Shown here piece by piece: positions 2,551 through 62,845 of a stretch of 64,000 nucleotides of DNA (the stretch's first letter is position 1; each line of letters begins with the position of its first letter). Where the stretch lies: NCBI RefSeq assembly GCF_036588685.1, contig NC_086379.1, positions 62,930,001-62,994,000 of the forward strand. The letters are read 5' to 3'. The translations under genes and the position numbers were made by a program. This DNA comes from Mytilus trossulus (lineage: Eukaryota). The notes under the pieces are model-generated. The model did not search any database and was not told the origin of the DNA. It worked only from the letters and a program-made list of their open reading frames with translations.

Positions 2551-2821
2551 AAAAACCAGCTGCACCATGAGCGCATGATACGTCCGTCGCGTTTTCAAAG
2601 ATTAGAGTTCAATGACTTCTCAATTAAAAATTAAAAAAAACTAAAGTGAGATTATCTTTGTAGATGTAAATCAGTCATCAAAGTTTAAGGACAACTGCTC
2701 AAAGCATTGTTTAGTTATATACTTTTTATGAATAAAATCCAATAACTCAGGAAAAGTAAATCTAAAATAATGAGTAATTGTCCGAAAGCCCCATAACTAG
2801 TAAACGTAAAATCTGCTCAAT

Positions 2822-3116
2822 GAAATTAACGGTACCAATTTTCTTGCACCAGATGCGCATTTCGCCATTACATGTCTCTTCAGTGATGCTCGTGGCCAAA
2901 ATATTTAAAATCCAAAGCTTATATAAAAGATGAAGAGCTATAATCCAAAAGGTCCAAAAAGTATAGCCAAATCCGTGAAAGGAATCAGAGCTTTGCATGA
3001 GGGAGATACATTCCTTAATTTATAATAATTTCTAATATTTTGTAACAGCAAATTTAAATAACACAAAAAATCCGTATTTTCATGCCAGTACCGAAGTACT
3101 TGCTACTGGGCTGGTG
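2822..3116 (-). mobile_element. Retrozyme-like element, subfamily 2, partial
   Basis: Contains hammerhead 2846-2889. Distal end shares CCAGCCCAGTAG-CA-(C/T)ACTTCGGT with the main family. Confidence 0.65.
2846..2889 (-). ncRNA. Type I hammerhead ribozyme, second subfamily (CUGAAGA core, AUC site)
   Basis: Minus strand reads GCATCA-CTGAAGA-GAC(ATGTAAT)GGC-GAAA-T(GCGC)A-TC-TGGTGC. Stems I and III co-vary relative to the main family. One mismatch in stem II. Confidence 0.78.
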
Positions 3117-5933: not shown

Positions 5934-6027
5934 ACTATTTTGATCTGAGCGTCAATGGTGAGTCTTGTGTAGATGAAACGCGCGTCTGGAGTATTAAGTT
6001 GTAAGCCTGGTACCTTTGAAAACTATT
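5934..6027 (+). mobile_element. Retrozyme fragment with mutated hammerhead, nested in dispersed repeat E
   Basis: Core reads ATGGTGA instead of CTGATGA. Ends ..GGTACCTTTGAAAACTATT. Confidence 0.7.
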
Positions 6028-6807
6028 AATTTCTTTCATTTTCTACATAAGAAAATGCCTGTACAAAGTCAGGAATGTGATAGTTGTTCATTCGTTTGCT
6101 ATGTTTGAGCTTTTAATTTTGACTTTTGATCACAGACTTTCCGTTTTGAATTTTCCTCGTAGTTCGGTATTTTTGTTATTTTACTTTGGGTTAAATTTCT
6201 AAAGACAATGAAAATTTATAGAGTATTATTTGAAATATAGGAAAATAATATACAAGTTTCATAAAATGCAAAATGATATAATCAACACCTTTTTTATCTA
6301 GTATGCAACAAAAAACGATTGAATACAAGAGGCATTTTGTTATTGAAACATTTGACCCACATACTGAGAGAGATTTTCTTCAATCAAAGGACTTTTTCTG
6401 TTTGATATGTAACACATACATCAATATAAACTTTATATATCTTAAACTGACAAACATCTAAGAATGAGCTTTTTTCCAATAAAAGTAAAAATAAAACAAT
6501 TGACGAAAATAATCCAACAAAACAAAAATGAAATGCAAACATATCGATTCAATATGTACATAAAAAAATCGTCACAGATTCAATTACTTAATGATAAAAC
6601 TTTAAAAATAAAGATAATGAATATTAAATCCGTCTTTAATATTTAAAACGAGAGTGAATAGTAATTATATTGCCATGAAAAATAAATGAATGCAAAAGTA
6701 ACATAACCAAAATACCGAATTCCAAGGAAAATTCAAAATTGAAAATCCGTTTTTTAAATTGCAAAACCAAACGACTAATGAAAAACAACTTTCATATTCC
6801 TGACTTG

Positions 6808-7229: not shown

Positions 7230-10200
7230 TTGGTACAGACAATTCCTTATGGAGAAAATAGTAGATTTAACCTGATTTCATAGCTAGCTAAACATTTAAC
7301 TTGTACTACAAAACAGCAATTACAAGGAAAGCATTCCTTAGTAATATCTGCCCTAGATATGAATAGAAATATGAATAATCAAAGAAATAAAATACCCAAT
7401 GGTATTTAGTGTCTGTACGAAATCGCATTGATCCGAATTTTGTCTTTAAGTCGTTTGTTAATTGTCGATTTTCCCAAGGTATACTAGACCAGTTATTTTC
7501 AAAAGACAGCATATAGAGTTAGTCTGACTGTACATAAAAGGTTCATCAGAAGGTACAAAGACCTGAGCTTGTTGATAAATATTCTGTATCAACTTCACAA
7601 ATAATACACGATGGTCTTGAAATATAGATTCTGGGTACCGACGTTGTTCATCATCTGATTAACGTGTTATGGTATTCATTTATTTGTCTTTATGAATATG
7701 CTTTTATTGTTTTGTCAGTTCTTTTGGTGGAATACATTTGACGTGACTCTGTACTTATACATCTCGTCATTGTGTTATTGTTATATGATAATTTTGTATT
7801 CTTGTCTTTCATTTTTGCTAATATGCATTTTCTTTATGTCTTTTTGTGTTTCTTGGTTACGTATGACATGGCTCTGCACTTTTACATCCCGTCATTATGT
7901 TATTGTTCTATGATAATTTCTGTATTAGTGTCTTTTCATTTTGCTTATGTACTTTGTGTGTGTATAAAAAAAGAAGATGTGGTATGATAAACAATGAGAC
8001 AACTCTCCACAAGAGACAAAATGACACAAAAATTAACAACTATAAGTCACCGTTAATGTGTGCCTTTTAGTGTGTTTTTTCTTGCATATGACTTGGCTCT
8101 GTACTTATTTATCCCGTCATTGTGTCATGGTAAATGTTTCTTTATATATCTGTTTGTTTTTGTAGTGAATAAGATAATAACACAGTGTTGACTGCTAAAT
8201 TTTTTACATTTTTACCTATTTGGCTAACTGTTTTGTTCACACATTGTAGTCAGTATAATGGAATAAAAAACTGTGAAAATGTCTGTACCAAGTCCGGAAT
8301 ATGACAGTTGTCTTTGTCCAGTCGTTTGATGTGAAGGGACTTTCCGTTTTGAAATTTTTTCGGAGTTCAATATTTTTGTGATTTTACCTTTTTCTATATA
8401 TTTTTCTATGCAATAATGAAAATAATTAATAGCTACTTTTGATTTACAAAAACTCGCTTTTTGGTAGAATTAGATCAATATAGTTTCTAAGTTTCCTAAG
8501 TAGGAAATAAGTGCAAAGATGACTACCTTTCAAACTGTTTTGATTCGATGATCACAAATGAATGTTATGTAAACAAAACGCGTATGACGTCATCAATTTT
8601 AAGCTTGATATCTTCCATAAACGTGGTTTTTACCCCAAAGAAATAGACTGCCATAACCGTTTTGCAATACCTTTTCGGAATTTTTAGGTTTTTTTCCTTC
8701 TGCTTTGAATTTGATCATACTTTTCAACTGTTCATATCCCATTGCCTCAGATGAGTCTCACGTTTATATAACGCGTGTATGGCGTAACAAAATATAAGCC
8801 TAGTAGCTTAGGTTTTCTAGAGTTTTTTTCTCTGTTTGACCTCTTTTAATGATCACAAACCTGTCAATATTATGCATGTAAAAGATCACATTGTTTTATC
8901 ACCTCCAAGTCAAACATTTCATGAATTAATAAGTCGTGAATTTAACATTTTAAGGGCATAACTCCTGTGCACACTTGTGAATTGCTACGAATCAATGCCA
9001 TTTTTGAATTAATGGTATTTCAGATGTGAAGCCTATCTCTTTTTCAAGAATGAATTAGAAACTGTTATAATATTGTTGTCCTGTCATTTCAATTTAGCTA
9101 GCACCAAAACCATGTTCAACACCCGATATTTTCTTAAAATGTCCTTTACCAAGTCAAGAAAATTGCCACTGTTATATTATGGTTCGTTTCTCTGTGTGTT
9201 ACTTTTAAGTGTTGTGTTTCTGTTGTGTCGAATTTTCCTCTTATCTTTGATGTTTTTCACTCAGTTTTAGTTTTAACCCGGATCTGGGTTTTTTTTCACA
9301 ATCGATTTATGAATTTCGAACAGCGGTATTCTACTGCTGCCTTTATTTATAATATAGTGTCGTTTAACAAGTACATGCATATGCTAGCTTTCACAAATGA
9401 AAGAGATAAAAAAAAATTAAATCATTGATTGACATATTGAATATACAATTGCTTATTGTTGAAGACCTTAAGTTGACCTCTGTATGTCTTTTGTTTGTGT
9501 GTTATTGAAGGAAAAAGTTTTATTGAAAAATATTTGTATTTTACACATTGATATGTCAGTTTCTAAACAATAAAAAATAAGATTATAGCTAAATCCGACT
9601 TTCTTAGTTACAGTTACACTTTCTATAAACTCAAAAGGTACAAGGATTAAAATTCTGTACGCAAGAAGCGAGTTACCTCTACAAAAGAATAATCAGTGAC
9701 ACTCGAATAAAAAGAGTTAAACAGGTCAAAGTAAAGTTTAAGTTTGGAGAGCATTTGAAAAATAAAGTTTAGAAAGGTTTGGAAAAATGTAAACCCTCTA
9801 GTTCATCAGATCAAGAGGGTACTGTCAGTTCCATCAAATGTTAAATCAAGAGAGTGAACTATATATTAAGTCAAGAGTGTACCATCCGGTAAATTAAATG
9901 TAGAATCAAGAGAGTGGACTATCTTGTCTATTAAATGTTAAATCGAGAGAGTGTACCGTCTATTCTATCAAATGTTAAATCGAGAGAGTGTACTGTCCGG
10001 TCTATCACATGTTGAGCAAACAGAGTGAACCGTGTAAAACCATGTTTGTTAATTTGTAGAATAAATAACTTTTGAACAGCGGTACACTATATATAGCTAC
10101 AGCTGTCTTTATTTATTTCAAGGATTCAACCAGTCCGGTAGCCTGACAGCATGTAAACTAGTAGAATGAATTCACTATTGAACAGCGGTATATTTCTGAT

Positions 10201-10416
10201 GAGTTTATTTATTCATTAATAGAGTGAACCACATGGTTTAAATTTTTAATCAAGAGAAAAAATTATCTAGTCCAGCAAATGTTTTATTAGAAAAGAGTAT
10301 AATCTGGTCCGAAGCGCATTTCTGGATTTACCTTTATTGGGTCAAAGAGGATGAAATATATTTGATATCCAATGACAACTTTGTACTTGTTTTGCTTTAA
10401 AACTATTTTGATCTAA

Positions 10417-10460
10417 GCGTCACTGATGAGTCTTATGTAGACGAAACGCGCGTCTGGCGT
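10417..10460 (+). ncRNA. Type I hammerhead ribozyme, intact core (predicted cleavage after C10454)
   Basis: GCGTCA-CTGATGA-GTC(TTATGTA)GAC-GAAA-C(GCGC)G-TC-TGGCGT. Stem I is GCGTCA/TGGCGT, stem II is GTC/GAC, stem III is minimal with a palindromic loop, and the triplet is GUC. Confidence 0.88.
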
Positions 10461-10757
10461 ATTAAGTTAAAATCCTTTTACTTTTGATAACTATTTACAC
10501 CATTGAGTCGATGCCACTGCTGGTGGACGGTTCGTCCCCGGGGGTATCACCAGCCCAGTAGTCAGCACTTCGGTGTAGACACGAATATCAATTATATGGT
10601 CATTTTTATAAATTTCTTGTTACAAAAACTTTGAATATTTTCGAAACTTTAAGGATTTCTTATCCCAGGAATATATTACCTTAGTCGTATTTGAAATTTT
10701 TGGTCCTCAATGCTCTTCATCTTTGTACTTGTTTGGCTTCAAACTGTTTTGATCTGA

Positions 10758-10800
10758 GCGTCACTGATGAGTCGTATGTAAACGAAACGCGCGTTTGGCG
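10758..10800 (+). ncRNA. Type I hammerhead ribozyme, second copy of the tandem pair (weakened)
   Basis: CTGATGA and GAAA intact. Stem II is GTC/AAC (one mismatch). GUU triplet ends at 10795. Confidence 0.72.
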
Positions 10801-11159
10801 AATTAAATTTTAATCGTGGTACCTTTGATAACTATATATAAGAACTGAAACAGGTAACAAGCTATATAACCAAAAATGGACATACCAGTACTAGTCAAAT
10901 CCTTGTATGGTCAACTTTTACAATTTTAAATCAAATGTCAAATCAAACACTGTAAAGTAAATAAACTAGTCCATGTAATGTTAAATCAAGAAAATGAACT
11001 TTCAGTTCTATCAAATATGAAATAAAGTGAGAACAATCTAGTCCAGGGTAAAACCAAATCCAGGAGTGGACTATCTTGTACATTGTATATTTAAACTGTT
11101 AAAATCAAAAGATTGAACCATCTACTTCTTAATGGATCAAAGTAAAGAGTAAATAATCT

Positions 11160-16394: not shown

Positions 16395-16508
16395 GGTTCC
16401 TTATTTGGCCTTTTATTTTTTTTAGATTTGAGTGTCACTGATAAGTCTATTGACGAAACGCGCGTCTGGCGATCAAAATTTAATCCTGGTATCTATGATG
16501 TGTTTATT
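16395..16508 (+). mobile_element. Retrozyme fragment with mutated hammerhead (16432-16471)
   Basis: CTGATAA core, then GAC-GAAACGCGCGTCTGGCG. Ends ..CCTGGTATCTATGATG. Confidence 0.7.
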
Positions 16509-17890: not shown

Positions 17891-20800
17891 TTAATAGGAA
17901 GAAGCCTCATATCCTATATCAAATAAACTTTTTCAAAACAATTCAGTGCCTTACAATGAAGGAAATTGTGTTTATGAAATTCATATGGAAAACGACAAAT
18001 ATTCGTGTTAAATCTTGAAAATCTATACATTATTTCTAAATAAATGAATTGTGAAATCCTCCAATGCGACATATGAATTACACGATAGGTACCAATAGTG
18101 AATTGAATTAAGAACTGCTATGCCATCCAGGGCACATGTTTCAACTGCCAATTTAGTTCGGGTTCGTGTTGTTAAATTATAGTGGTATAGAGTTTTGTGG
18201 ACTGTTAATTGTTGATTTTTGTTTTTTGGTCGTTGTGTTTTCGGTTTTTCTTCTACTTATGTTTTTATGCCCCTTGACTTTCTCCCTTTTTTAACTTTCA
18301 TTTACGGAAAAACTTCCCTACCTTATAAAAAAACTTAACATTGCCTTAGATAACACAGTCTTTTAGTCCTCTTAGCTCCGAAAAACTTACAGTATGATCT
18401 ACAAATTAAAACGATAAAAAATCATGTTTTTTTAAACTCACAAAGTCAAATATAACATGTTCTTGATAGAATGATTAGGATAGGTCCTATGAAATATCCA
18501 TTTATCATTACAAAAATCATCGATCTATATGTAACAATAGTATCCTACACAATAATCGATTATCTGTTGAATTCAATTAATTCAGTGGAAAATATAAGTA
18601 CATAAAACAACAGGTGCTCTCAAAAAATGTTTTGCTGAAACTGCATAAAATGTAAAATGTGATTTTCATCATGTATCATACAGTTTGGATATGGAAAGAC
18701 GTGTAATTCAATAAGATATCTGTATTTTTATTAAGTTCTTATGTTTCTCTTTCTGATTCTTATATTGATGCAGAAAAGCGAAACGCTTCATTTCTCTTCA
18801 TCATTGGGAAATTTGTCATTTCCATAATCTTTTAATATACGCAGTTGTCACATTTTATATTCTAGTGCAAATGAACCTTTTTTTTACGATCATTATAGAT
18901 ACAAATTTTAAATTTTAACCTACTAAAAACTTTACATGTTTGCTATAAGTATAACTATGATGATTGATGCTTGCTCTACGTCGCATTAGAGTATAAGGCC
19001 ATATATCTCATCAAAAGCTCATTTGAATATTTTACAAAAAAGTGGTGCTGTTTTAAAATGAAAAAAAATATCTGTCCTTTACTTAACTAAAACTTTCGTT
19101 TAAAATGAAATGACTTTACTGTTCCACACTAAGAATGCGTGCTAGGATAGAAAAACTGTTAACACTATTTAGATTCTGGAATATTTTATATTGTTTTTGA
19201 ATGAAACAATTGTATTGCCTATGGTACTGTCAAATTAATCATTCATAGTATTGGAAGGGTCTGCAACAGGTTGTCGGGGTAAATGTTAAGTTGTACATGC
19301 ATTTAATTTTCCATTTTTTTCCGGATTGTTATATATATAACAGCTTAAATCATGGATATATGTTATCTATCCCTACGTATCTATTGCATCAGACGTAATT
19401 GGCTCCGCTTTTATAATTATGTATTTTTTATTGCATCATATTTGATTTGGCTTTTAACCTGCTTTGATTCTAGCGCCACTGATGGGTTTATTTGTCGTAT
19501 CAAACAGGCCCACCAATGTATAAGCCTTGTATCTTTAATTAGTGTTTATAACCATATCAACATCATCTAGTTTGGCTTTCCAGCAGATTTTTGACTTGCT
19601 GATATAAAACCAAAATGTATCTACTGTCCTAGATCAATTAGTATCATTGATGAATACAAGGTAATATAGGTCCTGCAATGATCCGTTGAATTTTGTACGC
19701 CATCACCGAAAAGCAGCGAAAAGTATATAATAGTTCTGCAGAGAGAAAATGCCTCTCTCAAAAGTAGTTCGACTTCTCTTTTTCGTATACTGCAAGGGTG
19801 CTGAAATAGAAAACGATATTTTTTTGTGAGTAATTGGTTTTTGTTGATTCCGGAAATTGAAGGCTCACAATCGACGACAGTAAACGAAGCAAAAACACTT
19901 TACAGACTCTTATTCCATTCCTTACTTTTTCTTGGTTAGTATCAATCGTTCACACAATTACATATTTATCAGAACATACCCAAGGTTAGTTATCATACGA
20001 GCTAGCCATGTTTGAGGTTTAAAATATCTGCAGCGTTTAAGTCCGTGTTATTTATTGTTTTGGTTAATTTACTATCATTTATTTGATGAATGTAAAGAAA
20101 GACCTTCTTAAAAACAACTAACATATCTTTAAAGAAGAGAGCTAGCGATGGGACCATATGTGGAACAGGATCGTTTAACACTTTCAGAGCACCTGAGGTC
20201 ACCCTAAGATATTTGTGTTGCTCAGTTTTTAGTTTTTTTAAAGCTGAGTTTTGTGTACTGGTGTTTGTCAGTTTATCTGTTGATCTTTTTTGTTTAGCCA
20301 TGGAGTTGTCAATTAATGTTTGGCTTATGAGTTTGAAATACCGTTATATAAATTAGAGTTGAGGGACTTTACAATTTGGCGCAGAGCCTATGAGAATGCA
20401 GTGTTTTGAAAAAATTTAAAAGGTGTCTATATTTACCATAAAATTAAAAGTTTAAGTTGCTGTTTATTGTAAATTTAGAACACTGTACATGGTAAGCATT
20501 TTAAATATAATAGTCTTTTCTCTTAACAATGTTATTTTACCTATACACTTTCAGATATCAAAATACTGACATAAGTGTAGAACATATGAATCGCAACAAT
20601 GTATAAAACTTGTACAGCAGTAGTAATAGCATTTTACAATACACTCATCCCAAAGAATTTCCTATAAAAATCAAACTCATGTAGTCTGTATAAAGAAACA
20701 AGAACACTTGTTAAATCTGAAATAAGTAATTTTATTTATTACATGTCCATTTCAATAAATCTTAAGAATTCTAAAGTAAATGAACTTAAAAGAAATAAAA

Positions 20801-24471: not shown

Positions 24472-24818
24472 CAAATTTGATGCCAATGCTTGTGGACGTT
24501 TCGTCCACAAGGGTATCACCAGTCCAGAAGTCAGCACATCGGTGTTGACATGAATACTAATTGTATGGTCATTTTTATAAATTTCAAGTTTACAAAACTT
24601 TGAATTTTTCGAAAAACTAAGGATTTTTTTATCCCGGGAATAGATTACCTTAGCCGTATTTGGCACAATGTTTTGGAATTTTGGGTCCTTAATACTCTTC
24701 AACTTTGTACTTGAAAGGCTTCATAACTATTTTAATCAAAGCGTCACTGATAAGTCTTATGTAGACGAAACGCGCGTATGGCGTATTTAATTATAATCCT
24801 GTTACCTTTGATAACTAT
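24472..24818 (+). mobile_element. Retrozyme-like element, about one monomer, mutated hammerhead (24741-24784)
   Basis: Colinear with 10505-10835. Core CTGATAA, GUA triplet. Confidence 0.8.
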
Positions 24819-25490
24819 ATATGACATTTTAATTTATATTTTAGAGATCAACAACATATATCTATTTGTACTACAAGTGTATGCAAAATGGTCAAATAAG
24901 TCAATTATGACCAAACATGCATATATAAGTTTCATTAAACCAGCCTTTTCGTTTTGATAGGTCTGAGGCTTAAGGGAACCCAAGTTAGATAATGATTTAT
25001 ATCTTAGTTCGGAAATCCTGATTCTTTCTGCAAAATTATATTGAATATCAATATGTATATATTCATTGGTCATATTACAAAAACAAATAGGGTATGATTA
25101 TCGGCAGAAAAAAACATTCTGCAAACGGTTGCATCGTAGCTACAACTGACCAAAATAGATTGCATTACTAATGTTAAGATGAACCAATGTGTTCAAGGTG
25201 GAAATACTGAATGTTATTATGTCTATAAAAAAAATATTACAAGTCAGGAATATGACAATTGTTATCCATTCGTTTGGTGTGTTTGAGTTTTTGATTTTGG
25301 CATTTGATTATGTACTTTCAGTTTTGAATTTTCCTCGGAGTTCATTACTTTTGTAATATTACTTTTCTGATGGCGTTGAAATAATCAAAAGGAGGATCTT
25401 TTTGAATAAGGCCGTCACGCATTAGAATATAAACGGTATAAAGAAATGGGAACGGTAAAAAATGAGGTGATAGACGATTTTGAATTAAAT

Positions 25491-28847: not shown

Positions 28848-29232
28848 AAATAAAGGCAACAGTAGTATACCGCTGTTCAAAACTCATCAATCCATGGACA
28901 AAAAAAAATAATTGGGGTAACACGCTAAAACCGAGGGAAACGCATTAAATATAAGTGGAGAACAACGACATAACACTGAAATGTAACACACACAGAAACG
29001 AATTATAATATAACAATGGCCACATTCCTGACTTGGTACAGGGCATTTTTGAAGGAAAAAATGGTGGGTTGAACCTGGGTTTATGGCATTCCAAACCTCG
29101 CACTTTTATGGCCATGTGAACTATAACATCAAAATAAATGACAACACAACACCACAGGACTACAATATAAATAAATAGGAGAACACAATTCACAAAGAAT
29201 CTCATTAACAACAGCCAACAAAAGGCAACAAG
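28848..29232. repeat. Dispersed repeat family B (terminus AAATAAAGGCAACAGTAGTATACCGCTGTTC)
   Basis: Other copies at ~9086-9348, 12548-12722, 15216-15374, 42425-42617 and 50797-50937. One end is fixed and the other variable. Confidence 0.85.
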
Positions 29233-29773
29233 TTCAAAATTTTAATACGCCAGAAGTGTATTTTGTCCACACAAGACCTACTAGTGCCGCCCAGATACAA
29301 AAGTACAAAGTTGAACAGCATCGAGGACCAAAAGATCAAAAAAGTTGTGCCAAAAACGGCACGGGTTTTCTAAACTACGATGTATATACTTTTAAATATC
29401 AATTGAAAGCACATAGTAAGATTGTGGATATGTTGAATGATAATGAAAAGGTATAGTCCATCAAAAATTTTAAAAATCAAATGACGACACAAGTGAAAAA
29501 AACAACAACTTCCATCTACATGAGTTGGTACAGGAATTTCCCGAAGAAAATAATTCGTTAAACCTGGTTTTATAGCTAGCTTAACCTCTCACTTGTTATG
29601 ACAGTTGAATAAGAGTTAGGTGATTTGAAGACATATAAAGAAGGTTGATAACTGGAGTTTGATCGATATTTTTTTTAAGTAAAACACGCGTTAAGGATGA
29701 AGCACACATGTACATTAAAGATACTCATATGCTCATGTATTATAACAAACCTTTCTATAATTATCCTGTATAT

Positions 29774-30050
29774 TAACTCATCATAAATACCAGGACTTAA
29801 TTTTTTATACACGCCAGACGCGCGTTTCGTCTACAAAAAGACTCATCATTGACGCTCGAATCCAAAACAGTTAAAAAAGCAAAATAAAGTACGAAGTTTA
29901 AGAGCATTAAGGACCAAAATTACTAAAAGTTATGCCAAATACAGCTAAGGTAATCTATGCCTGAGGTAGAAAAGCCTTAGTGTTTCAAAAATTCAAAATT
30001 TTGTAAACAGTTAATTTATAAATATAACCATATCAATGCTAATTCATGTC
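29774..30050 (-). mobile_element. Retrozyme-like element, partial, mutated hammerhead (29811-29855)
   Basis: Minus strand reads ATGATGA-GTC..GAC-GAAACGCGCGTCTGGCGT. Body is homologous to the other copies. Confidence 0.75.
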
Positions 30051-43690: not shown

Positions 43691-43981
43691 GGTGTAATAA
43701 TAGTTATCAAAGGTACCAGGATTATAATTTAGTACGCCGCCAGACGCACGTTTCGTCCACATAAGACTCATCAGTGACGTTCATATCGAAATATTTATCA
43801 AGCCAAACAAGTACAAAGTTGAAGAGCATTGAGGATCCAAAATTCCAAAAAGTGGTGCCAAATACGGCTAAGGTAATCTATGCCTGGAATAAGAAAATTC
43901 TTAGTTTTTGAAAATTTCAAAGTTTGGTAAACAGGAAATTTATTAAAATGACAACATTATTGATATTCATGTCAACACCGA
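43691..43981 (-). mobile_element. Retrozyme-like element, partial, intact hammerhead
   Basis: Reverse complement of the 10570-10835 and 24540-24818 segments. Confidence 0.8.
43738..43779 (-). ncRNA. Type I hammerhead ribozyme, intact core
   Basis: Minus strand reads CGTCA-CTGATGA-GTC(TTATGTG)GAC-GAAA-C(GTGC)G-TC-TGGCG. Confidence 0.82.
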
Positions 43982-46210: not shown

Positions 46211-47341
46211 ATTGAGCTTCTAAGATCGACACCTTATTTTCTAAATTTAACTGAATAAATTGAAGAGAAGAAAATCATAACTCATGAGAAAATAATCATA
46301 ATCATTTAATAAAAAAAAGGAGCTCATCATGCTTAAATAATTACTGAAGTTATTTTATACACACAATTTATCGTTCGATCGAATATCACTTATCAGGGCT
46401 TGTAATGTTTAATAACTAATTCCATTAGTTTCTGATATGAGTACATTATGGTCAACATTAGTGTTTTTAATTATACATGAACCCATTTATTTTCTACAAA
46501 CATCGCTAAATTGAATAGTGTTCTGATTAATTAATATATGTGTATGCATCCATATTTCCACAATAGTTATTCCTTGATGGTTTTTTTTTCCATTTAAACC
46601 ATTTTTTTGCGAATTTTGTACACTTCATGACTTATGATAATTAGATAAAACGATGCAGACAATATATCCTAATGATTGTATTCTATTTTAACATATATTG
46701 TCATATGTTTTATCGATGATGAGGTAGCTATCTAAATAAATGTTGTATATTACGACTGTTCCAGGACAGTCGTGGTGTTTCAGTGGAGAATGCATAAACC
46801 TTATTTCAATTTCGTCAGTCCAGCAAGCCGAGGTTTGTTTCCTGTAAAACCCGACATTTCAAAATCATAATAAGGCAAAAGAGGTTTTATGCTGATAAAT
46901 GTATTGTGTTGTCAGTCGCTGACTTTTACTCAATATATCTGTTTTTATATCTATAAAACTGTGTTATCAAGGAAATAAGAAATAGACACAGAAAAAGGCT
47001 TATTTATAAAAGTAACATAAATGAAAAAATAGTTTAAAAAAATGATTTCTACTTGTTAGGAAAATGTACCTGTTAAACGCTTTGGGTTTGCAAGTTCCAA
47101 TGTTTTTTTAGTTGTTATAAAATCAAGCAAAAGTTAGTATGATATTATAACTTGGGCATGAACCTCTCCTCTTCTCGTTTTCACAAGTGACTTTCCAATT
47201 GAACCAATATTGATTAAGCTCAGCAAAATAGAAAAACTTCTGCCATTACCTTGTTCGTTAAAAATGTATACAGAGCACTTTAACAATTACATCTTGTAAA
47301 GAAAATACAGCAATTAAAATGGATCGTGCCAAGATTAAATA

Positions 47342-47536
47342 TTTCTTATCCCAGGCATGAGTTACCTTAGCCTTTATTTGGCACAACTTTTTGGAATTTT
47401 GGATCCTCAATGCTCTTCAACTTTGTATTGTTTTGGCTTTATAAATATTTTGATATGAGCGTCACTGATGAGTCTTATGTAGACGAAACGCGCGTCTGGC
47501 GTACTAAATTATAATCCTGGTACCTTTGATAACTAT
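47342..47536 (+). mobile_element. Retrozyme-like element, 5'-truncated, intact hammerhead
   Basis: Homologous to 62650-62840 and 24628-24818. Ends GGTACCTTTGATAACTAT. Confidence 0.82.
47459..47502 (+). ncRNA. Type I hammerhead ribozyme, intact core (predicted cleavage after C47496)
   Basis: Identical 44-nt motif to 10417-10460. Confidence 0.88.
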
Positions 47537-49889
47537 AGGTTGATATCTTCATACTCATCAGATTCAAATTAATCAACCGTAAAAGACTAAGGTGAACACA
47601 TGAATTTTACGCTGTGAATGTTTTATGGAAAGAAACAACCATCGCATACTGTATGCACAAACAAAAGTCATATTAGTACAGTAAACTTGACACATAGACA
47701 TCTCCAGTCTAGTCAGAAGACTTCTTCAGAGGAGGGTGTCTGTCTAACAGTTAAATCAATAATAACAGTCGATCAGAAGGTAAACATTTATTGAATGTAT
47801 ACTCAAGTTATCAGACAGTGCCAAGTCTCATTTGTTTTAAGTAGTCCCTTTAAACCCCATGTGCCCTCAGAATCGAACAATTGATTGTCCTAATTGTGGC
47901 TGAAATAATAGACACAGGACGTAAAAAAATAAATGCACTTTACTTTAAGCAGTCTGCAGGGATACATAATTCTGTATATATGATTTTTTGCCAGCCATCA
48001 GATTTTTCGGTCATCTGAGTTCACAGCACTTCAGTTCTTTGATAAGATAAAAATAAAAGCACAAACTTAAAACACTTAACTATCCAATAAATCAAATCAA
48101 ATTAAGCAAGAGTTTGTACAAAAATGTGGTGCATAAAAAATATAAAACAACGCTTTTCATTAGAAAATATGTTCGACACCACAGCAGTTTATATTTATAA
48201 AAATACTTAAGAAAACTAATTTATTTCTGGCTTGATCGTTTTTACAAGGGGTCTTTATAAACTTGAGGACGGTTGTCAAAACATAGACCTGAAATTTGAT
48301 ACGGTAGATTGCAATGGTCAATGAAACAAACAACCTAAGCATTAAAAAAACAGTTGTGGAATATTTCACCAATGAGACAGCAATCCAACAATGAACATAA
48401 CCTGCATAGACAACATGATCAAAAGTCTATCAATTTACTTTTTATAACATGTCAGTTATTAATTTGACAAACGCGATTTTTTTTCATATATCAATCTTTT
48501 CCGTTCATTAATTCCTTTTTCGTTATGATTACAAAGAATTTTAGACAAGATTGAAATACACATTGCATTTTATATTTACTTTAAAAACAGGGAAATAAAA
48601 CCGACAAACTATTACTACAATAGCTTCAATTTTAAAACGCAGCCAATATAGATTTGATTTCCTTCTGATAAATAATATCATAAATCAATTTCACTGAAGG
48701 CGTTTGATATCAAACAAAGATAATACAATTGGATTTATCCGAATACTTGAAAAGTATGGAAAAGAGCATCAGCTTCGTTCTAAGTAAACTACAAGCAATA
48801 TCTCCATGGGAAGAAGGCACCAAAGTTCTACTGAACATCCTGTTTACTGCTCACTTGCCGCTGGGATGCAATTATAATCAACAATATTCTAAGGATTCAT
48901 TCCCTATGACTGATAATCAAAATAGCTAACATTGAATTAATATAAAGGTTTAGTTGCTATAAGAGTCTTGAGAAAGCTGCATATCATCATCTTCAGAACG
49001 TATTTATACATCATTTCTATTATAAAGGTCTGACACAAATTAAAAATTGATTTTTGATACAGATAACATAAGGAACGGCAGTCTACGTGAGGACATTACC
49101 ATCAACAGATGCCGGATTTATTTCCGAGTAATTAAAACTACATTTTCTGTCTTTAAATGCACGACATCTTTCAACTAAATGCTTAATGAAGACTAGATAA
49201 TATTTGTTGACACGTTATTACAGTTAATAAGTAAGCTAGTGTGAAAGACACGTATGGAACGCCGTACGCTCTGTTCATTGTGAATGGTAACTGCATAGTG
49301 CTTTTATGCCTGGAACAAAACGATAGCCTCCTACATGTTGGCATTTCAAAATCTTGCCATCAAATTAGGTGCGATATCTTTAAAAGATTGAATGCACAAC
49401 CTTATCTTGTAATGTTTTCCTGTAACTAGAAAAAAATATTTAATTAAAATAAATAATCATTATAGTTTTTTCATCATGAAGAATCCAATTGTCTCTAAAT
49501 TATTCCACTATTTTTATTTAGTCAAAGAAATTGTAAAGTCAGTAAATCGTTTACGTTTTCTCATATACTCGCTGGATTTAAAGAAGTATTTTGTTCGATT
49601 TCCAACGGCGTTCATTAGCTTCAAATCAAAGTGCTTGTAACATTTAAACTGACAAGCGAACTACATTACTATTCATGAACATGCAATAATGCCGAAGTCT
49701 TTGACACTTGAGTGTACGAATGGTGTAATTACGTAATGTAAGGGTAGGTAAGGAAACGTCAAAATTTGTCTTCTCTGTATTTTAGCATCGATGTTATACA
49801 ATATAAGGCAGGTTCCATTGTTGTTGGGTTTTTTATGTGTTTTTTATTGGACAAACAACAACGTATTTTAACGACTTATCTACAAAAGA

Positions 49890-55539: not shown

Positions 55540-58500
55540 TTATAGTATGAAATTAATTAATGTGTTTATTTTCTCTTTGTCTAATGTATTATTTGATAAG
55601 TAACAGGGTACAGATTTCAGATGTGTTACCATGTATGATTTCCAAAGATTTAAAATATATGTAGAGGACATTTTTATCCCATCATATTTAATTTTGTTTC
55701 TTATTTTCCACAAGGACCATTTTGTCAAAATAAAAAATAGATTTACAAGTAAATTTTGGTTCGAGTGACCACTGCTAATTCCCAAAAGCATAAACTGTTT
55801 TAAATTATCATCATCTAATTGAATATTCCATAATGTAAAAATATCTTTGATTTTACTAATGATTAATTTTGTTGTATTGCAATCAAAAAATAAATGTTGA
55901 AGATTTTCAGTAATATTTACAGTTTGGCAAATATGACATTTTCCGTTTGACAATTGCATTTTTTAAGTCTACTTTCCGTATATATGATATTGTGAATGCA
56001 TTTCCATTGAAATTCTTTCATTTTATTGGTGATTTTAACTTTTTTCAAATTGCCCCATACTATTTTCCAATTAATTTCATGGCCATAGAATTCTTGCCAT
56101 TTAAGTTGACATTTTGGATATATATTCTTATTAATCATGTCTCGAATATATTTTAGTTTTAATTCTTTTGGTTTGATTATTTTCCCAAATCTGTCTAATA
56201 TAACCATTTCATTAGAAAGTTTCAATTCTATGTTTGGTTTCTTATTAATTTCATTATCAATTTCTAACATTTGTAAGAAGTCAATTGGTATTGCACTTTT
56301 AATTCTTGAAAATTCCGATATGCAGTTTCTTTTATCTACAAGTTTTTCAAATATAGAACAACAACTGTTAAATTTGTTGGTTTCTACATTCCATATGTCT
56401 TTGATATATTTCATGTTACTATTTAGAAAGGAAGAAAAAAACAATGGCTTATTTTGAAATGAAATTTTTGAATTACCAAATAGTCTCATATTAAGTACCT
56501 CGTTCTTAGTTTTGGGATTATCTCCAATTTTTAGAAAATTAGACCATGTAAAAATCATTTTCTGATAAAATAAAGGAATATTTTTAATATTTAGTCCTTT
56601 AATATTTGAACATTTACATAAAAAATACTGATCATTATACTTGTTGTCAAAGTGTCGAAGCCAATACTTGCCAATCGCATTCCAGCTTTCTAATGGTTCA
56701 TGGAGAATGCGATAAAGAGACTTTATTTGTTTACTTCTAATGAATAAGTCTATACTAATCATGCCCATTCCGCCCTTTGTTATATCAAGACAACAAACCT
56801 GTCTTTCTATTTGGTTAACTTTCCCATCCCATATAAAATTCCAAATAATATTGTTTATTTCTTTTGAATATTTTTCAAGAATTCCCCGCATTTCAATTTC
56901 ATAACTACACATGGGCAATATGAAATTTTTTACAATTAAGGTTTTACCACTAAATGAAAGTTTCCTGCTTTTCCAAACGTGGACACAGTTTTTAATCTTT
57001 TCTATTATACTTTGCCATATAGCATCATTATCAATTTCATATCCGTGATTTACTCCGAGGGTTTTTACACTACCTGTAATCCATTTAATTTTATTAAATT
57101 TTAGTTTTTTCCTTTTAAGAGATCCTATAAGTAAACCTTTGGTTTTATCAAAATTAATTTTAGATCCCGAAGCTTTTTCGTATAGCGTTAGGACATCAAA
57201 AGATTTTTCTACTGATTTCTCATTTTTGTTAAAAAGCTGAGTGTCATCAGCAAACATGCATAATTTAGTTTCTATACTTTTACCCCCCTCACCAGGTATT
57301 TGAATCCCTTCAATTTCCTTGTTACCTCGTATTGCACATGCCATTGGTTCTGCTTGCAAAATATATAGAAGGGGTGCTATTGGACAGCCCTGTCTGGCTG
57401 AACGTGTTATCGAAAAATATTTTGAAACATGTCCATTTGTTTTTATACAAGTAATAGCATCATAGAGTAGCATTTTAATCCATTGTCTAAATTTCCCCCC
57501 AAAATTAAACTTTTCTAATACAAAATCCACCCATTCCCATTCAACTCTATCAAAAGCTTTTTGTTGATCAAGAAATATTATTATTCCATCTTCGTCTTCG
57601 TTGTCAATATAGTCTATTATATCTTGAATTAATCTGTTAGCATCACTAATGTTTCTTCCTTTTACAAACCCTTTTTGATCTGAATGTATTATTTTCGGTA
57701 AGACTTTTTTCAGTCTCATTGCAAGAAGTTTTGCTATGATTTTATAATCGGTGTTAAGTAATGTAAGAGGTCTCCAATTTTTAATATTTTCCCTTTCACC
57801 ACCCTTATGTAATAACGTAAGAACCCCTTTATGTTGTGATTTACTTAAGACATTTTTAACAAATATTTCTTGAAGGAGTGTGAAAAAATCATTTTTTATT
57901 ATATCCCAATACAGTATGTAAAATTCAGATATAATGCCATCCTCACCTGGTGATTTGTTAGTCTTGAGATCTTTGAGCACTTTTTCTAATTCTTCCATAT
58001 TTATATTACTATCAAGCATCTCCTTATCGTCCGAACTTACCTTATTTTCAATAAATTGGCAAAGCTTTTCACCGCTATTTTTGTCCCACCCTTCAGCCGT
58101 AAAAAGTGTGGAATAGAAATTTACTTGTTCTTTTAATATCGAATCAATATCATATTTATACTCACCCGTTTTTGTTTTTATACGATTCCATAATTTGTTT
58201 TGGCCATTTTTCTTTTCTAAACTAAAAAAATATTTCGTTGATTTTTCACCTTCTTCTGACCATTTAATTTTTGCCCTAATTTTCGCAGATTCTGTCAAAT
58301 TTGTATAAATATCCTTAATTTCGCTTTCAATGTCGGTTATTCTAGAATTGGTGATACTTGTTTTTTCCTCTACTAATTTTAATGCTTCGAGTTGTTTTTC
58401 AAGTTTTTTAATGTGATTGTTATTATATACTCGATTTAGTGTTTTACTTACATCAATTGTTAGAAATTTTATTTTACTTTTGGTAATATCCCACCATTCT

Positions 58501-59379
58501 TGTATATCATTATATTTGTCTTTACTATTTTTCCATCCTTCCCAAAAGATTTTAAAAGCATTTGAAAACTGCTCAGATTTAATTGTATTTAAGTTCATAA
58601 TCCACATACCCGGCCCTCTTTCTATATCATCTAACTTAATTTTTTATGTAACTATTTCGTGATCACTAAATGGGAAATGAGATATACGAGTGTTAAATAT
58701 TTTACTATTCAAAGATTTGCTGCAGAAAATAAAATCTATACGAGACTTAGAATTTCCTCTCTGAAACGTATAACGTTTTGTATCTGGAAATCGAGATCTC
58801 CATATATCATCTAATTCATATCTCAATAAAAGATTTTTTAATTCAATTGTACCGACGTCATTATTTTGATGTGATGGCATTCTGTCTATTTTTTTGTCTA
58901 AAGTACAATTAAAGTCTCCTAATAATACGGTGTAGTGTTCAACGCTATCATCGTCATACACTTTATTTAAGTTGCGCAAATTTTCGTAAAAAGTCTTTCA
59001 ATCGGAACCGTTGTTCGGTGTATATACAGACGAGTTGTATATACATTAATAATATGATATACAGCATTATCTTTTTTATGTCACACATTTGACATCTTCC
59101 GTTTTCATCGTGATTTGTAAAAGTTACATTTTCAGAAAAATTCTTTTGCAAAAGGAATCCCACTCCCCTTGAATCAGAAGTTCCGCAATTCCAAACTGAT
59201 TCCCCTCCCCCAAATTTTTTCCAGTCATTACCCCAGTTATCAATATCAGATTTTGAACAATGTGTTTCTTGAAGACAAATAATATCGAACTTTTTTAAAA
59301 CTAACCAATTAAAAATCATATCTCGTTTTTTATTGTTTCGTAAACCATTTACGTTTATAGAAGCAATTGACAAAGACAT
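55540..59379 (-). pseudogene. Retrotransposon ORF2p (APE endonuclease, reverse transcriptase, CCHC), disrupted
   Basis: EN motifs SINVNG, LQETH, LLGDFN, SRIDF and SDH. RT motifs WRPLTLLNTDYKI, FLDQQKAFDRV, RQGCPIAP and FADD. C-terminal CHIC..HLFFDC. Lesions: -1 in A-run ~59072, 17-bp insertion ~59030, TGA 59000-58998, in-frame TAA 58646-58644, -1 in A-run ~55960. Confidence 0.93.
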
Positions 59380-59900
59380 ATTAAGATCGAATAGTTTTTT
59401 GTTTCTTTCTTTCGTCATTTAAATGTTTCACTTGAATGCTTTGAACCTGATTATATCTATTTGGAACAATAAACTTAACGGATCGTTTATGTGTATACCT
59501 TTGTGTAAACAAATCAGGTAAAACTTTAATCATAAAGCGTCGTTTAAAAACCGTATAAGGTGTAATAAACAGATTCTCATCATATAACAATACTAAGCGT
59601 CGTTTAAAAACCGTAAAAGGTATAATAAACAGATACTTATTCATCTTCTCAATATTTAACAATACAGTTTGGTATAGCTTAGCAATGTTTGCACTTTTTG
59701 CAATATATACATATAGGCATATAAACGAATTATTTTTAAATAACATATACATACGAAAAATATGTTTTAAAAAGTGGACATAATATTTACAGTGATACAT
59801 TTGTGTTTTTTGTTTGTTTTTTTTTTTTTTTGTTTTTTTTAAATATTTGTTTTTAACATTAAAATCAGATTAAGTAGTCTGAGTGTTTATTCACATGGGT

Positions 59901-62582: not shown

Positions 62583-62845
62583 TCAATGTGGTTATTTTTT
62601 ATACATTTCCTGTGTACAAAATTTTGAATTTTTCGAAAAACAAAGGATTTTCTTATCCCAGGCATAGATTACCTTAGCCGCATTTGGCACAATTTTTTGG
62701 GAATTTTGGTTCTTCAATGCTCTTCAACTTTTTACTTGTTTGGCTTTATAAATATTTTGATATGAGCGTCACTGGTGAGTCTTATGTAGACGAAACACGC
62801 GTCTGGCGTACTAAATTATAATCCTAGTACCTTTGATAACAATTT
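62583..62845 (+). mobile_element. Retrozyme-like element, partial, mutated hammerhead (62766-62809)
   Basis: Core reads CTGGTGA. Otherwise close to 47342-47536. Confidence 0.8.

What the first reader, a model, noticed from the sequence alone, without database searches (positions are those of the whole stretch)
10375..10835. Hammerhead-ribozyme (retrozyme) system: tandem pair predicts a 341-nt self-cleaving, circularisable RNA
Seen: two type I hammerheads in direct orientation with cleavage sites at 10454 and 10795. Eight more recognisable copies lie at 2846, 5949, 16432, 24741, 29811, 43738, 47459 and 62766, with worn relics near 8550, 8750, 9660, 19475 and 29250. Known: tandem minimal type I hammerhead repeats (non-LTR retrozymes) yield circular RNAs in several invertebrates, including Mytilus as I recall, so the class itself is not new. 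Inference: read-through transcription here could release a 341-nt monomer. The ORF track misses this system entirely.
Basis: partly seen in the sequence, partly recalled or inferred. Interest (0 to 1): 0.8.

Follow-up and report, generated by a model that had tools for sequence, protein, structure and literature searches.

The report
Worn copy of known mussel-type retrozyme
This is an old, partly decayed 1.3-unit copy of an abundant and already published kind of small non-coding mobile element that carries a self-cutting hammerhead RNA motif; the family is transcribed, but this copy shows no sign of producing RNA itself.

Summary
Two type I hammerhead motifs lie in direct orientation at 10417-10460 and 10758-10801, with cut sites after 10454 and 10795, 341 nt apart (Rfam RF00163: 33.0 and 24.8 bits, cut-off 34). 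All 13 other listed sites are recognisable.

The element is a non-LTR retrozyme of the kind published for Mytilus galloprovincialis: about 353-nt units, thousands of copies, circular RNAs (PMC7229834). The core 32-mer occurs 11,823 times in this 1.3-Gb genome, partly in arrays with a 354-355 nt period.

The locus 10375-10838 is a 1.31-unit retro-insertion. Its 3' end is the family's fixed one, 41-47 nt past the cut site, and its 5' end is truncated. It is about 87% identical to younger copies and lacks 13 nt that they have, which explains 341 rather than 354.

The second ribozyme has a GUU cut triplet and only 2 of 4 helix II pairs. In three RNA runs the flanks are silent, and 89-99% of reads (X21) at the locus's own letters carry another copy's letter. 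So the family is expressed, but release of a 341-nt RNA from this locus is unsupported.

The scan has noted this family before: 292 notes, the eight shown all from other DNA of this genome. The kind is already known and interest is low.

The parts
10375..10838 (+). Whole retrozyme insertion, 1.31 units: 5'-truncated partial unit, one full 341-nt unit and the family's 3' tail
   Evidence: Self-BLAST and alignment to a natural young unit (L008:1501-1853) place the 5' end at unit position 276 and the 3' end at unit position 43. Identity is 86.6%. GC is 36.9%, and the longest stop-free stretch is 47 codons.
10417..10460 (+). Hammerhead 1 (type I). Core CUGAUGA/GAAA intact, helix II 4 bp, helix I 6 bp, helix III palindrome; cut after C10454
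   Evidence: RF00163 33.0 bits against gathering score 34. Identical to the commonest string, 131 of 170 strict-pattern hammerhead strings in L001-L030; overlapping loci count the same arrays repeatedly and L001 is this locus itself.
10455..10795 (+). The 341-nt unit between the two cut sites
   Evidence: 83-87% identical to the 352-355-nt units found elsewhere in the genome. It lacks 13 nt after 10689 that most RNA reads have. The linear fold is no more stable than shuffles, z = 0.23.
10758..10801 (+). Hammerhead 2. Core intact, but helix II reduced to 2 pairs (10773/10781 and 10774/10780 do not pair), outer helix I pair lost, cut triplet GUU (after T10795)
   Evidence: RF00163 24.8 bits. Non-pairs and a fold energy of +0.9 kcal/mol.
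10796..10838 (+). 3' tail: the 41-47 nt beyond the cut site at which insertions of this family end
   Evidence: 16 of 17 delimited insertions end at unit position 40-47. The 17th (L025) was merged with a neighbouring fragment. The tail 21-mer gives 7 matches in the window against 0.00 expected.
47335..47538 (+). Youngest copy in the window (0.58 unit); hammerhead identical to HH1
   Evidence: 93.9% identity to the young unit; RF00163 33 bits at 47459-47502.
43691..43981 (-). 5'-truncated copy (0.82 unit) with an intact hammerhead core
   Evidence: 91.1% identity; RF00163 28.2 bits at 43734-43780.
24479..24821 (+). Copy of 0.97 unit; core reads CUGAUAA (core G to A)
   Evidence: (87.8%).
62586..62845 (+). 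Copy of 0.74 unit; core reads CUGGUGA
   Evidence: 22 bits; 90.8%.
5934..6027 (+). Short 5'-truncated copy (0.27 unit: hammerhead plus tail) with two core substitutions
29780..30050 (-). Copy of a sister family with a similar hammerhead but a different tail; core reads AUGAUGA
   Evidence: 29.1 bits; 80.7%.
16421..16499 (+). Short copy of the sister family; core reads CUGAUAA
2817..2902 (-). Hammerhead-like motif of a third type (CUGAAGA...GAAA)
   Evidence: Read. Alignment score 55 against a shuffle maximum of 47. The same type occurs at L030:276-319 and on the minus strand of L055, near its low end.
8538..8620 (+). Worn relic
   Evidence: Score 54 against a shuffle maximum of 46; BLAST 73%.
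8744..8809 (+). Worn relic
   Evidence: Score 49 against a shuffle maximum of 37.
9631..9713 (-). Worn relic
   Evidence: Score 80 against a shuffle maximum of 44; BLAST 75%.
19463..19555 (+). Worn relic
   Evidence: Score 47 against a shuffle maximum of 39.
29210..29302 (-). Worn relic
   Evidence: Score 66 against a shuffle maximum of 46.

Best explanation
Window 10375-10838 is one old retro-inserted copy (1.31 units) of the abundant ~353-nt non-LTR hammerhead retrozyme family of a mussel-like genome.

How the family works, from the literature and not tested here: tandem units are transcribed, each unit's type I hammerhead cuts the RNA, a host tRNA ligase (RtcB type) closes the monomer into a circle, and a reverse transcriptase supplied in trans copies the circular or multimeric RNA into cDNA longer than one unit.

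Shown here: insertions of this family have a fixed 3' end 41-47 nt beyond the cut site and variable 5' truncation points, and they range from 0.27 to 2.46 units among the 17 delimited, with far longer arrays elsewhere. The family is transcribed, and most sequenced fragments run through the cut site.

Inferred: this layout is what cDNA synthesis starting at one defined internal site on a circular or multimeric template would leave.

This copy has decayed since insertion. HH1 is still intact in sequence. HH2 has lost helix II pairs and has a weaker cut triplet, and 13 nt of the body are deleted. No transcription of this locus is detectable. It is therefore most likely a dead relic and not a current source of a 341-nt circular RNA.
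For: Hammerhead calls: RF00163 33.0 and 24.8 bits.

Family size:
- The 32-mer from core to cut site occurs 6029 + 5794 = 11,823 times, and 0 times in the reversed control. Arrays have a 354-355 nt period, for example about 71 units at C1:269295-294459.
- There are 6919 first-look candidates for the unit, of which 39 were scored, giving 122 matches.
- 42 hammerhead matches exceed the Rfam cut-off; 74 of about 218,202 rough candidates were scored, giving 48 matches at E<=0.001. 0 of 14 control genomes ring.

Insertion anatomy: 16 of 17 delimited insertions end at unit position 40-47. Their 5' ends lie at positions 56 to 351.

Age:
- The locus is 86.6% identical to a young unit, whereas 12 units from different loci are 93.0-99.1% identical to each other (median 94.9).
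- The two duplicated ends of the locus are 85.7% identical over 119 nt.

HH2 damage: 3 non-pairs, and a fold energy of +0.9 against -5.7 kcal/mol for HH1.

RNA:
- Reads laid: 6376 of 8.71 M (X21), 7298 of 8.25 M (X22) and 4030 of 12.7 M (X24) records.
- Depth is confined to 10372-10847. The flank bins 10236-10371 and 10848-11100 read 0 in X21 and at most 3.6 in the other two runs.
- In X21, 19/320/2330/3707 reads fall in the identity classes 99+/95-99/90-95/<90.
- At each of the 16 listed element positions, 89.3-99.0% of X21 reads carry the other letter.
- The 13 nt missing after 10689 are present in 34 of 281 crossing reads, and also end the consensus of 897 clipped reads at 10690 (X21).
- No pile-up of fragment starts or ends at either cut site; the reporting threshold is one fifth of the local depth.
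- The bin spanning the first cut site has the highest depth in X24 and on the first-mate-on-+ side of X21 and X22, and is within about 7% of the highest on their other side.

Literature: M. galloprovincialis has about 5000 type I HHRs in 350-390-bp repeats, a dimeric construct named DRtz_Mg353, circRNAs seen on northern blots, kobs about 0.1/min and RtcB circularisation (PMC7229834, passages).
Against: - HH1 misses Rfam's gathering score by 1 bit, and the window gives no hit at gathering threshold.
- The organism is coded, and the published mussel sequences are in supplements I could not open. Identity with the published family therefore rests on unit size, copy number, motif type and a mussel-like genome, not on a sequence comparison.
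- No target-site duplication could be found for this locus, and none was consistent across the 17 insertions, so that retro-insertion hallmark is missing.
- Reads were laid at 80% likeness. A low level of locus-specific RNA (about 1-3% of reads keep the locus's letters) cannot be excluded, and only 6-18% of each run was read.
- The predicted folds of the 341-nt and a 352-nt monomer are no more stable than shuffles (z = 0.23 and -0.44). This does not match the 'highly self-paired' description in the literature.
- HH2's core is intact. Its palindromic helix III pairs with HH1's in the MFE fold of the 464-nt transcript, so some double-hammerhead cleavage cannot be ruled out in silico.
Confidence: 0.87

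Rival explanations
1. The locus is a working retrozyme gene. Read-through or internal transcription yields a dimeric RNA, both hammerheads cut (perhaps as a double hammerhead), and a 341-nt monomer is released and circularised.
For: - HH1 is identical to the family's commonest ribozyme string.
- HH2 keeps CUGAUGA, GAAA and the helix III palindrome.
- In the MFE fold of the 464-nt RNA, 10446-10453 pairs with 10787-10794. A cofold of two motifs adopts the double-hammerhead layout at -29.5 kcal/mol.
- 1-3% of X21 reads keep the locus's letters at most diagnostic positions.
Against: - Flank depth is essentially zero in three RNA runs.
- 89-99% of X21 reads at the diagnostic positions come from other copies.
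- Most RNA carries the 13 nt that the locus lacks.
- HH2 helix II is reduced to 2 pairs and the cut triplet is GUU.
- The locus's letter at 10774 is also a variant in other genomic copies (20 of 170 strings), so even the residual reads are not specific to this locus.
Confidence: 0.06
2. The tandem pair arose at the DNA level, by local duplication or unequal crossing-over of a satellite repeat, and not by insertion of a cDNA longer than one unit.
For: The family forms long satellite-like arrays, about 71 units at one place, which can grow by unequal exchange. No target-site duplication flanks the locus.
Against: The copy ends at the family's canonical 3' terminus and starts at an arbitrary internal point. 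This is the same n.x-unit layout seen in 16 of 17 independent insertions. Duplication in place would not produce that end structure again and again.
Confidence: 0.07

Closest known systems
Mytilus galloprovincialis non-LTR retrozyme (construct DRtz_Mg353; Cervera & de la Pena, NAR 2020, PMC7229834)
   Same: - One type I hammerhead per unit in direct tandem.
- Family unit 352-355 nt, against the published 350-390 bp and 'Mg353'.
- Thousands of copies, low GC (37.8%) and no coding capacity.
- Abundant RNA that runs through the cut site.
   Different: - This locus is a 341-nt deletion derivative, about 87% identical to younger copies, with a damaged second ribozyme.
- Sequence identity with the published clones could not be checked, because the supplements are closed and the organism is coded.
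- The exact 32-mer count here (11,823) is higher than the ~5000 HHRs reported from the 2016 draft genome.
Newt satellite 2 and axolotl retrozymes (double-hammerhead cleavage)
   Same: Weak monomeric helix III (2 bp plus tetraloop) inside an 8-nt palindrome that can form an intermolecular helix III. The double-hammerhead layout is the predicted cofold and appears in the MFE fold of the locus transcript.
   Different: The published mussel ribozyme cleaved from a cloned genomic repeat during transcription, at about 0.1/min (PMC7229834). Whether dimers are needed here is only a thermodynamic prediction.
Hammerheads in pseudo-LTRs of Penelope-like elements, and 'retrozymes as non-autonomous PLE sequences' (bioRxiv 10.64898/2026.07.22.740005; PMC8557442)
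   Same: [quoted passage not shown] PLEs with open frames are abundant in this genome: 149 GIY-YIG matches from 150 scored of 615 candidates.
   Different: No PLE that shares the retrozyme's hammerhead or terminus was found among the 30 loci examined. The one shared 27-nt block, in a Naiad-type PLE, is an insertion relative to that element's own paralogous repeats.
SINEs
   Same: Short, non-coding, dispersed and 5'-truncated, with a defined 3' end, and mobilised in trans.
   Different: No tRNA, 7SL or 5S head and no A-rich or microsatellite tail were seen. Copies can exceed one unit, which points to a circular or multimeric template.
Plant LTR retrozymes
   Same: A hammerhead-bounded unit that yields circular RNA and is copied by a borrowed reverse transcriptase.
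   Different: Plant elements have type III hammerheads, LTRs, PBS and PPT, 600-800-nt circles and high GC. None of these is seen here.

Membership tests
Rfam RF00163 Hammerhead_1 | Covariance-model score at or above the gathering score (34 bits) | tested here: not met
   HH1 scores 33.0 bits and HH2 24.8 bits, and the window gives 0 hits at gathering threshold. Elsewhere in the same genome, 42 matches pass the cut-off (74 candidates scored). HH1 misses by 1 bit with every core position as in the model consensus.
Hammerhead ribozyme (catalytic motif) | Conserved core CUGANGA ... GAAA, a cut triplet NUH, and three helices around the core | tested here: met
   HH1 has the full core, GUC, helix I of 6 bp, helix II of 4 bp and helix III of 2 bp plus a tetraloop. 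HH2 has the core and GUU, but only 2 helix II pairs. The numbering and the rule that core changes abolish activity are recalled from the literature and come from no call.
Hammerhead ribozyme (catalytic motif) | Self-cleavage at the predicted site | not testable with these tools
   RNA-seq shows no pile-up of fragment ends at 10454/10455 or 10795/10796 above one fifth of the local depth. That is expected if the molecules are circular or uncut, and it neither shows nor excludes cleavage.
Metazoan non-LTR retrozyme (PMC7229834) | Type I HHRs in short direct tandem repeats of 150-450 bp, from dimers to large multimers | tested here: met
   The cut sites are 341 nt apart at the locus. Family arrays have a period of 352-355 nt.
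Metazoan non-LTR retrozyme (PMC7229834) | Low GC (<45-50%), no LTR/PBS/PPT, no coding capacity | tested here: met
   GC is 37.8%. The longest stop-free stretch is 47 codons, also when the unit is read as a circle. I saw no LTR-like terminal repeats beyond the unit's own tandem overlap. PBS and PPT were not searched for specifically.
Metazoan non-LTR retrozyme (PMC7229834) | Expressed as monomer-length linear and circular RNA | tested here: inconclusive
   The family's RNA is abundant and continuous across the cut site in 3 RNA runs. On a tandem reference, short reads cannot tell circles from multimers. Locus-specific RNA was not detected.
Metazoan non-LTR retrozyme (PMC7229834) | Target-site duplications longer than 4 bp, when present | tested here: inconclusive
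   No convincing duplication at this locus. One of 17 insertions (L030) has a possible imperfect ~25-nt duplication.
Non-autonomous derivative of a Penelope-like element (bioRxiv 10.64898/2026.07.22.740005) | Sequence homology between the retrozyme and the pLTR of a PLE in the same genome | tested here: inconclusive
   Only a 29-nt match (26 of 29) with the pLTR of a Naiad-type PLE. The block is absent from that PLE's two paralogous internal repeats, so it looks acquired and not ancestral. Only 30 GIY-YIG loci, with 1.5-kb flanks, were scanned.

The most novel reading that the evidence does not exclude
Copies longer than one unit that share a fixed 3' end 41-47 nt past the cut site would record reverse transcription primed at one defined internal site of a circular or multimeric retrozyme RNA. 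The same terminal 27-nt block sits as an insertion in the terminal repeat of a young Naiad-type Penelope-like element with an open 929-aa frame. That block could be a template-switch scar of the element's own reverse transcriptase. If so, a hammerhead-less Naiad, and not a canonical hammerhead-bearing PLE, would be the enzyme source that mobilises mussel retrozymes.
Probability: 0.12. Interest if true: 0.45.

Novelty: already known. Interest (0 to 1): 0.14.

Why it matters
For genome annotation it matters modestly. The ORF track misses a repeat family that contributes about ten recognisable hammerhead sites plus five worn relics to this 64-kb window and at least 11,823 ribozyme cores to the genome. 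Those copies should be masked and labelled as retrozymes.

The class, its circular RNAs and its link to Penelope-like elements are in print, so this locus adds no new biology. The fixed 3' end with variable 5' truncation is a clean footprint of how the family is copied, but the scan has already noted it on other DNA of this genome.

Tried and rejected
- Rfam at gathering threshold gave nothing. The motifs appear only with E-value thresholds.
- Two scripts timed out: a fuzzy-regex scan and a circular fold with my own shuffler. I replaced them with BLAST and strand folding.
- Single-motif MFE folds do not recover the hammerhead fold and are no better than shuffles. I gave this little weight because helix III is only 2 bp.
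- Monomer folds are not unusually stable.
- The target-site duplication search gave nothing consistent.
- Partner search. Of 30 GIY-YIG loci, four carry a full retrozyme hammerhead plus tail within 1.5 kb (L034, L046, L048, L056). They lie on either strand and at different distances. At the window's own density of about 10 copies per 64 kb this is no enrichment, so I treated them as chance neighbours.
- The 26-of-29 match in a Naiad-type PLE is not that element's 3' terminus, which lies about 420 nt further on in all 5 copies. It is an indel relative to paralogous repeats. I therefore rejected it as a shared 3' recognition tail.
- The window's own LINE (55540-61301, minus strand) holds no match to the tail motif.
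- I did not build a covariance model, because the family's hammerheads are nearly invariant: 14 distinct strings among 170.
They may already describe the copy ends or give sequences that would settle identity with the published family.
- Papers seen. PMC7229834, PMC7761336 and PMC8557442: passages by 'find'. bioRxiv 10.64898/2026.07.22.740005: abstract, outline and section 14. All other titles: search listings only.
Full report
OBSERVATION. The region 10375-10838 holds two type I hammerhead motifs in direct orientation. Rfam's Hammerhead_1 model (RF00163) matches 10417-10460 at 33.0 bits and 10758-10801 at 24.8 bits, both full length over the model (positions 1-45 of 45), against a gathering score of 34. 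At gathering threshold the window has no Rfam hit at all. The predicted cut sites are C10454|T10455 and T10795|T10796, 341 nt apart. Chance is excluded. A degenerate hammerhead pattern matches 4 times against 0.01 expected, and the 32-mer from core to cut site matches 6 times with up to 3 mismatches against 0.00 expected.

- Rfam lists 47459+, 29811-, 43734- and 62766+.
- 24741+ is found by pattern, and 5949+ and 16432+ by BLAST.
- 2846 is a hammerhead-like motif of another type on the minus strand.
- The five 'relics' each align to the hammerhead-plus-tail better than any of 200 shuffles.

STATE OF THE RIBOZYMES. HH1 has the full CUGAUGA/GAAA core, a GUC triplet, a 6-bp helix I and a 4-bp helix II. 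Its helix III is only 2 bp plus a tetraloop, lying inside an 8-nt palindrome. HH2 keeps the core, but two helix II pairs and the outer helix I pair are lost and the triplet is GUU. Evaluated in the hammerhead fold it gives +0.9 kcal/mol, against -5.7 for HH1.

Neither motif adopts the hammerhead fold as its MFE structure. Two motifs co-fold into the double-hammerhead layout at -29.5 kcal/mol. In the MFE fold of the 464-nt read-through RNA, 10446-10453 pairs with 10787-10794, and forcing monomeric folds costs 10 to 25 kcal/mol. These are predictions only.

Of the nine copies of this hammerhead type read letter by letter, three are undamaged (10417, 47459, 43734), HH2 is damaged in a helix, and five carry a core substitution. 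That such core changes abolish activity is recalled from the hammerhead literature and comes from no call.

THE FAMILY. The window is part of a 1.30-Gb genome in 541 contigs. The 341-nt unit finds 6919 first-look candidates, of which 39 were scored, giving 122 matches. Full-length matches are 83-87% identical and 352-355 nt long, often head to tail. The exact 32-mer occurs 11,823 times and never in the reversed control, including an array of about 71 units with a 354-355 nt period. 42 hammerhead matches exceed Rfam's cut-off; 74 candidates were scored, giving 48 matches at E<=0.001, and 0 of 14 control genomes ring.

This matches the published Mytilus galloprovincialis retrozyme. That family has about 5000 type I HHRs in 350-390-bp repeats and a dimeric construct named DRtz_Mg353. 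It self-cleaves at about 0.1/min and gives abundant circular RNA on northern blots, and RtcB circularises it in vitro (PMC7229834, passages). I could not compare sequences, because the supplements are closed and the organism is coded.

ANATOMY OF INSERTIONS. I delimited 17 insertions against a natural young unit: 6 in the window and 11 in fetched loci. Sixteen end at unit position 40-47, that is 41-47 nt beyond the cut site. The 17th was merged with a neighbouring fragment. Their 5' ends lie anywhere from unit position 56 to 351, and their lengths run from 0.27 to 2.46 units.

The locus under study fits this pattern: 5' end at unit position 276, 3' end at position 43, 1.31 units. No consistent target-site duplication was found.

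A fixed 3' end, 5' truncation and copies longer than one unit are what reverse transcription starting at one internal site of a circular or multimeric RNA would leave. That agrees with the model in PMC7761336 (passage). The words 'truncated' and 'rolling' do not occur in the main text of PMC7229834. The 2026 preprint's abstract does speak of rolling-circle transposition.

AGE. The locus is 86.6% identical to a young unit. Twelve units from different loci are 93.0-99.1% identical to each other. The other window copies range from 86.2 to 93.9%. The two duplicated ends of the locus are 85.7% identical over 119 nt. If they were alike at insertion, each has changed by roughly 7% since.

RNA (one call; three RNA raw-read runs plus one set of contigs; 80% likeness; 6-18% of each RNA run read).
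- Depth of hundreds to about 1500 covers 10372-10847 and stops at the element's ends. The flank bins read 0 in X21 and at most 3.6 in the other two runs. A small island at 10168-10235 belongs to another repeat.
- Most reads are under 95% identical to the locus (X21: 19/320/2330/3707 by identity class).
- At each of the 16 listed element positions, 89.3-99.0% of X21 reads carry the other letter. In X24 the share falls to 65% at 10774, but there the locus's letter is also a variant in other genomic copies (20 of 170 strings).
- The 13 nt that the locus lacks after 10689 appear as an insertion in 34 of 281 crossing reads, and they end the consensus of 897 clipped reads at 10690 (X21).
- The RNA laid here therefore comes from other copies, and 341 nt is a private deletion length.
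- In X21 and X22, pairs whose first mate lies on the minus strand outnumber the others 4- to 8-fold over the body. If these are the usual dUTP-type libraries, the RNA is mostly of hammerhead polarity. X24 is symmetric.
- No pile-up of fragment starts or ends is reported at either cut site (threshold one fifth of the local depth). The bin across the first cut site has the highest depth in X24 and on one strand side of X21 and X22, and is within about 7% of the highest on the other.
- This fits circular or uncut RNA but cannot tell them apart, because on a tandem reference a circle junction looks like read-through.

PARTNER ELEMENT. This was a side question, followed only in part. GIY-YIG matches are numerous: 149 from 150 scored of 615 candidates, many in long open frames. 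Among 30 such loci, four hold complete retrozyme ends nearby, in no fixed arrangement. I take these as chance, given the window's density of copies.

Three loci of one PLE family share a 29-nt match (26 of 29) with the retrozyme's last bases. That element (L061:1967-7101) has the following features:
- 535-nt terminal direct repeats that are 99% identical.
- A 929-aa frame with GIY-YIG at residues 143-235.
- A weak RVT_1 match further on, E 0.0077 and under the Pfam cut-off.
This is the Naiad layout described in PMC8557442.

Two results argue against a shared 3' signal. The block lies about 420 nt before the element's 3' end in all five copies. It is also missing as a clean 27-nt gap from the element's two paralogous internal repeats. 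It therefore looks like an acquired retrozyme end: either a tiny 5'-truncated insertion or a template switch.

A 2026 preprint already argues from Xenopus that retrozymes derive from PLE pseudo-LTRs, so the general link is in print.

VERDICT. The specific prediction for this locus is not supported: this is an old, damaged, apparently silent copy. The scan holds 292 notes with the words 'hammerhead retrozyme'; the eight shown lie on other DNA of this genome, and some describe the fixed 3' end. Those notes are AI notes, and I re-tested the fixed end myself.

Noticed in passing
L061:2054-2081 and 6654-6681 (also in L062-L065): A Naiad-type Penelope-like element (4.6-kb unit, 535-nt terminal repeats, open 929-aa frame) carries a 27-nt block that matches the last bases of retrozyme insertions. 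The block is absent from the element's two paralogous internal repeats, so it looks acquired.
   Followed up: partly
window 16421-16499 (+), 29780-30050 (-); loose ends at 10416 and 10462: A sister retrozyme family shares nearly the same hammerhead but has a different tail and body. It is transcribed as well: 356 (X21), 395 (X22) and 210 (X24) reads leave the locus at 10462 with that family's tail.
   Followed up: partly
window 2817-2902 (-); L030:276-319; minus strand of L055, near its low end: A third hammerhead type (CUGAAGA core, a different helix III palindrome). In L055 it lies about 1.4 kb downstream of a degenerate GIY-YIG frame on the same strand, so it may belong to a canonical Penelope-like element.
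   Followed up: no
window 55540-61301 (-): A LINE-like retrotransposon. It has a 466-aa frame with a GDSL esterase domain, a 151-aa fragment of the Exo_endo_phos endonuclease domain, and an 896-aa frame with RVT_1 (E 5.5e-35).
   Followed up: partly
window 10168-10235: A small island of RNA depth (about 20-45 per strand) outside the retrozyme. Most reads (65-100%, by run and place) carry other letters at 10193, 10195 and 10199, so it belongs to another repeat family.
   Followed up: no
window 10406-10473 against 10508-10643: In the two strand-asymmetric RNA runs the minority orientation is relatively stronger over the hammerhead (about 1:1.7) than over the body (1:4 to 1:8). Antisense or other-family transcripts that contain the shared hammerhead would explain this.
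   Followed up: no
Read by eye, it belongs to a different repeat, and the Naiad-type element's 3' end seen here does not carry that motif.
   Followed up: partly
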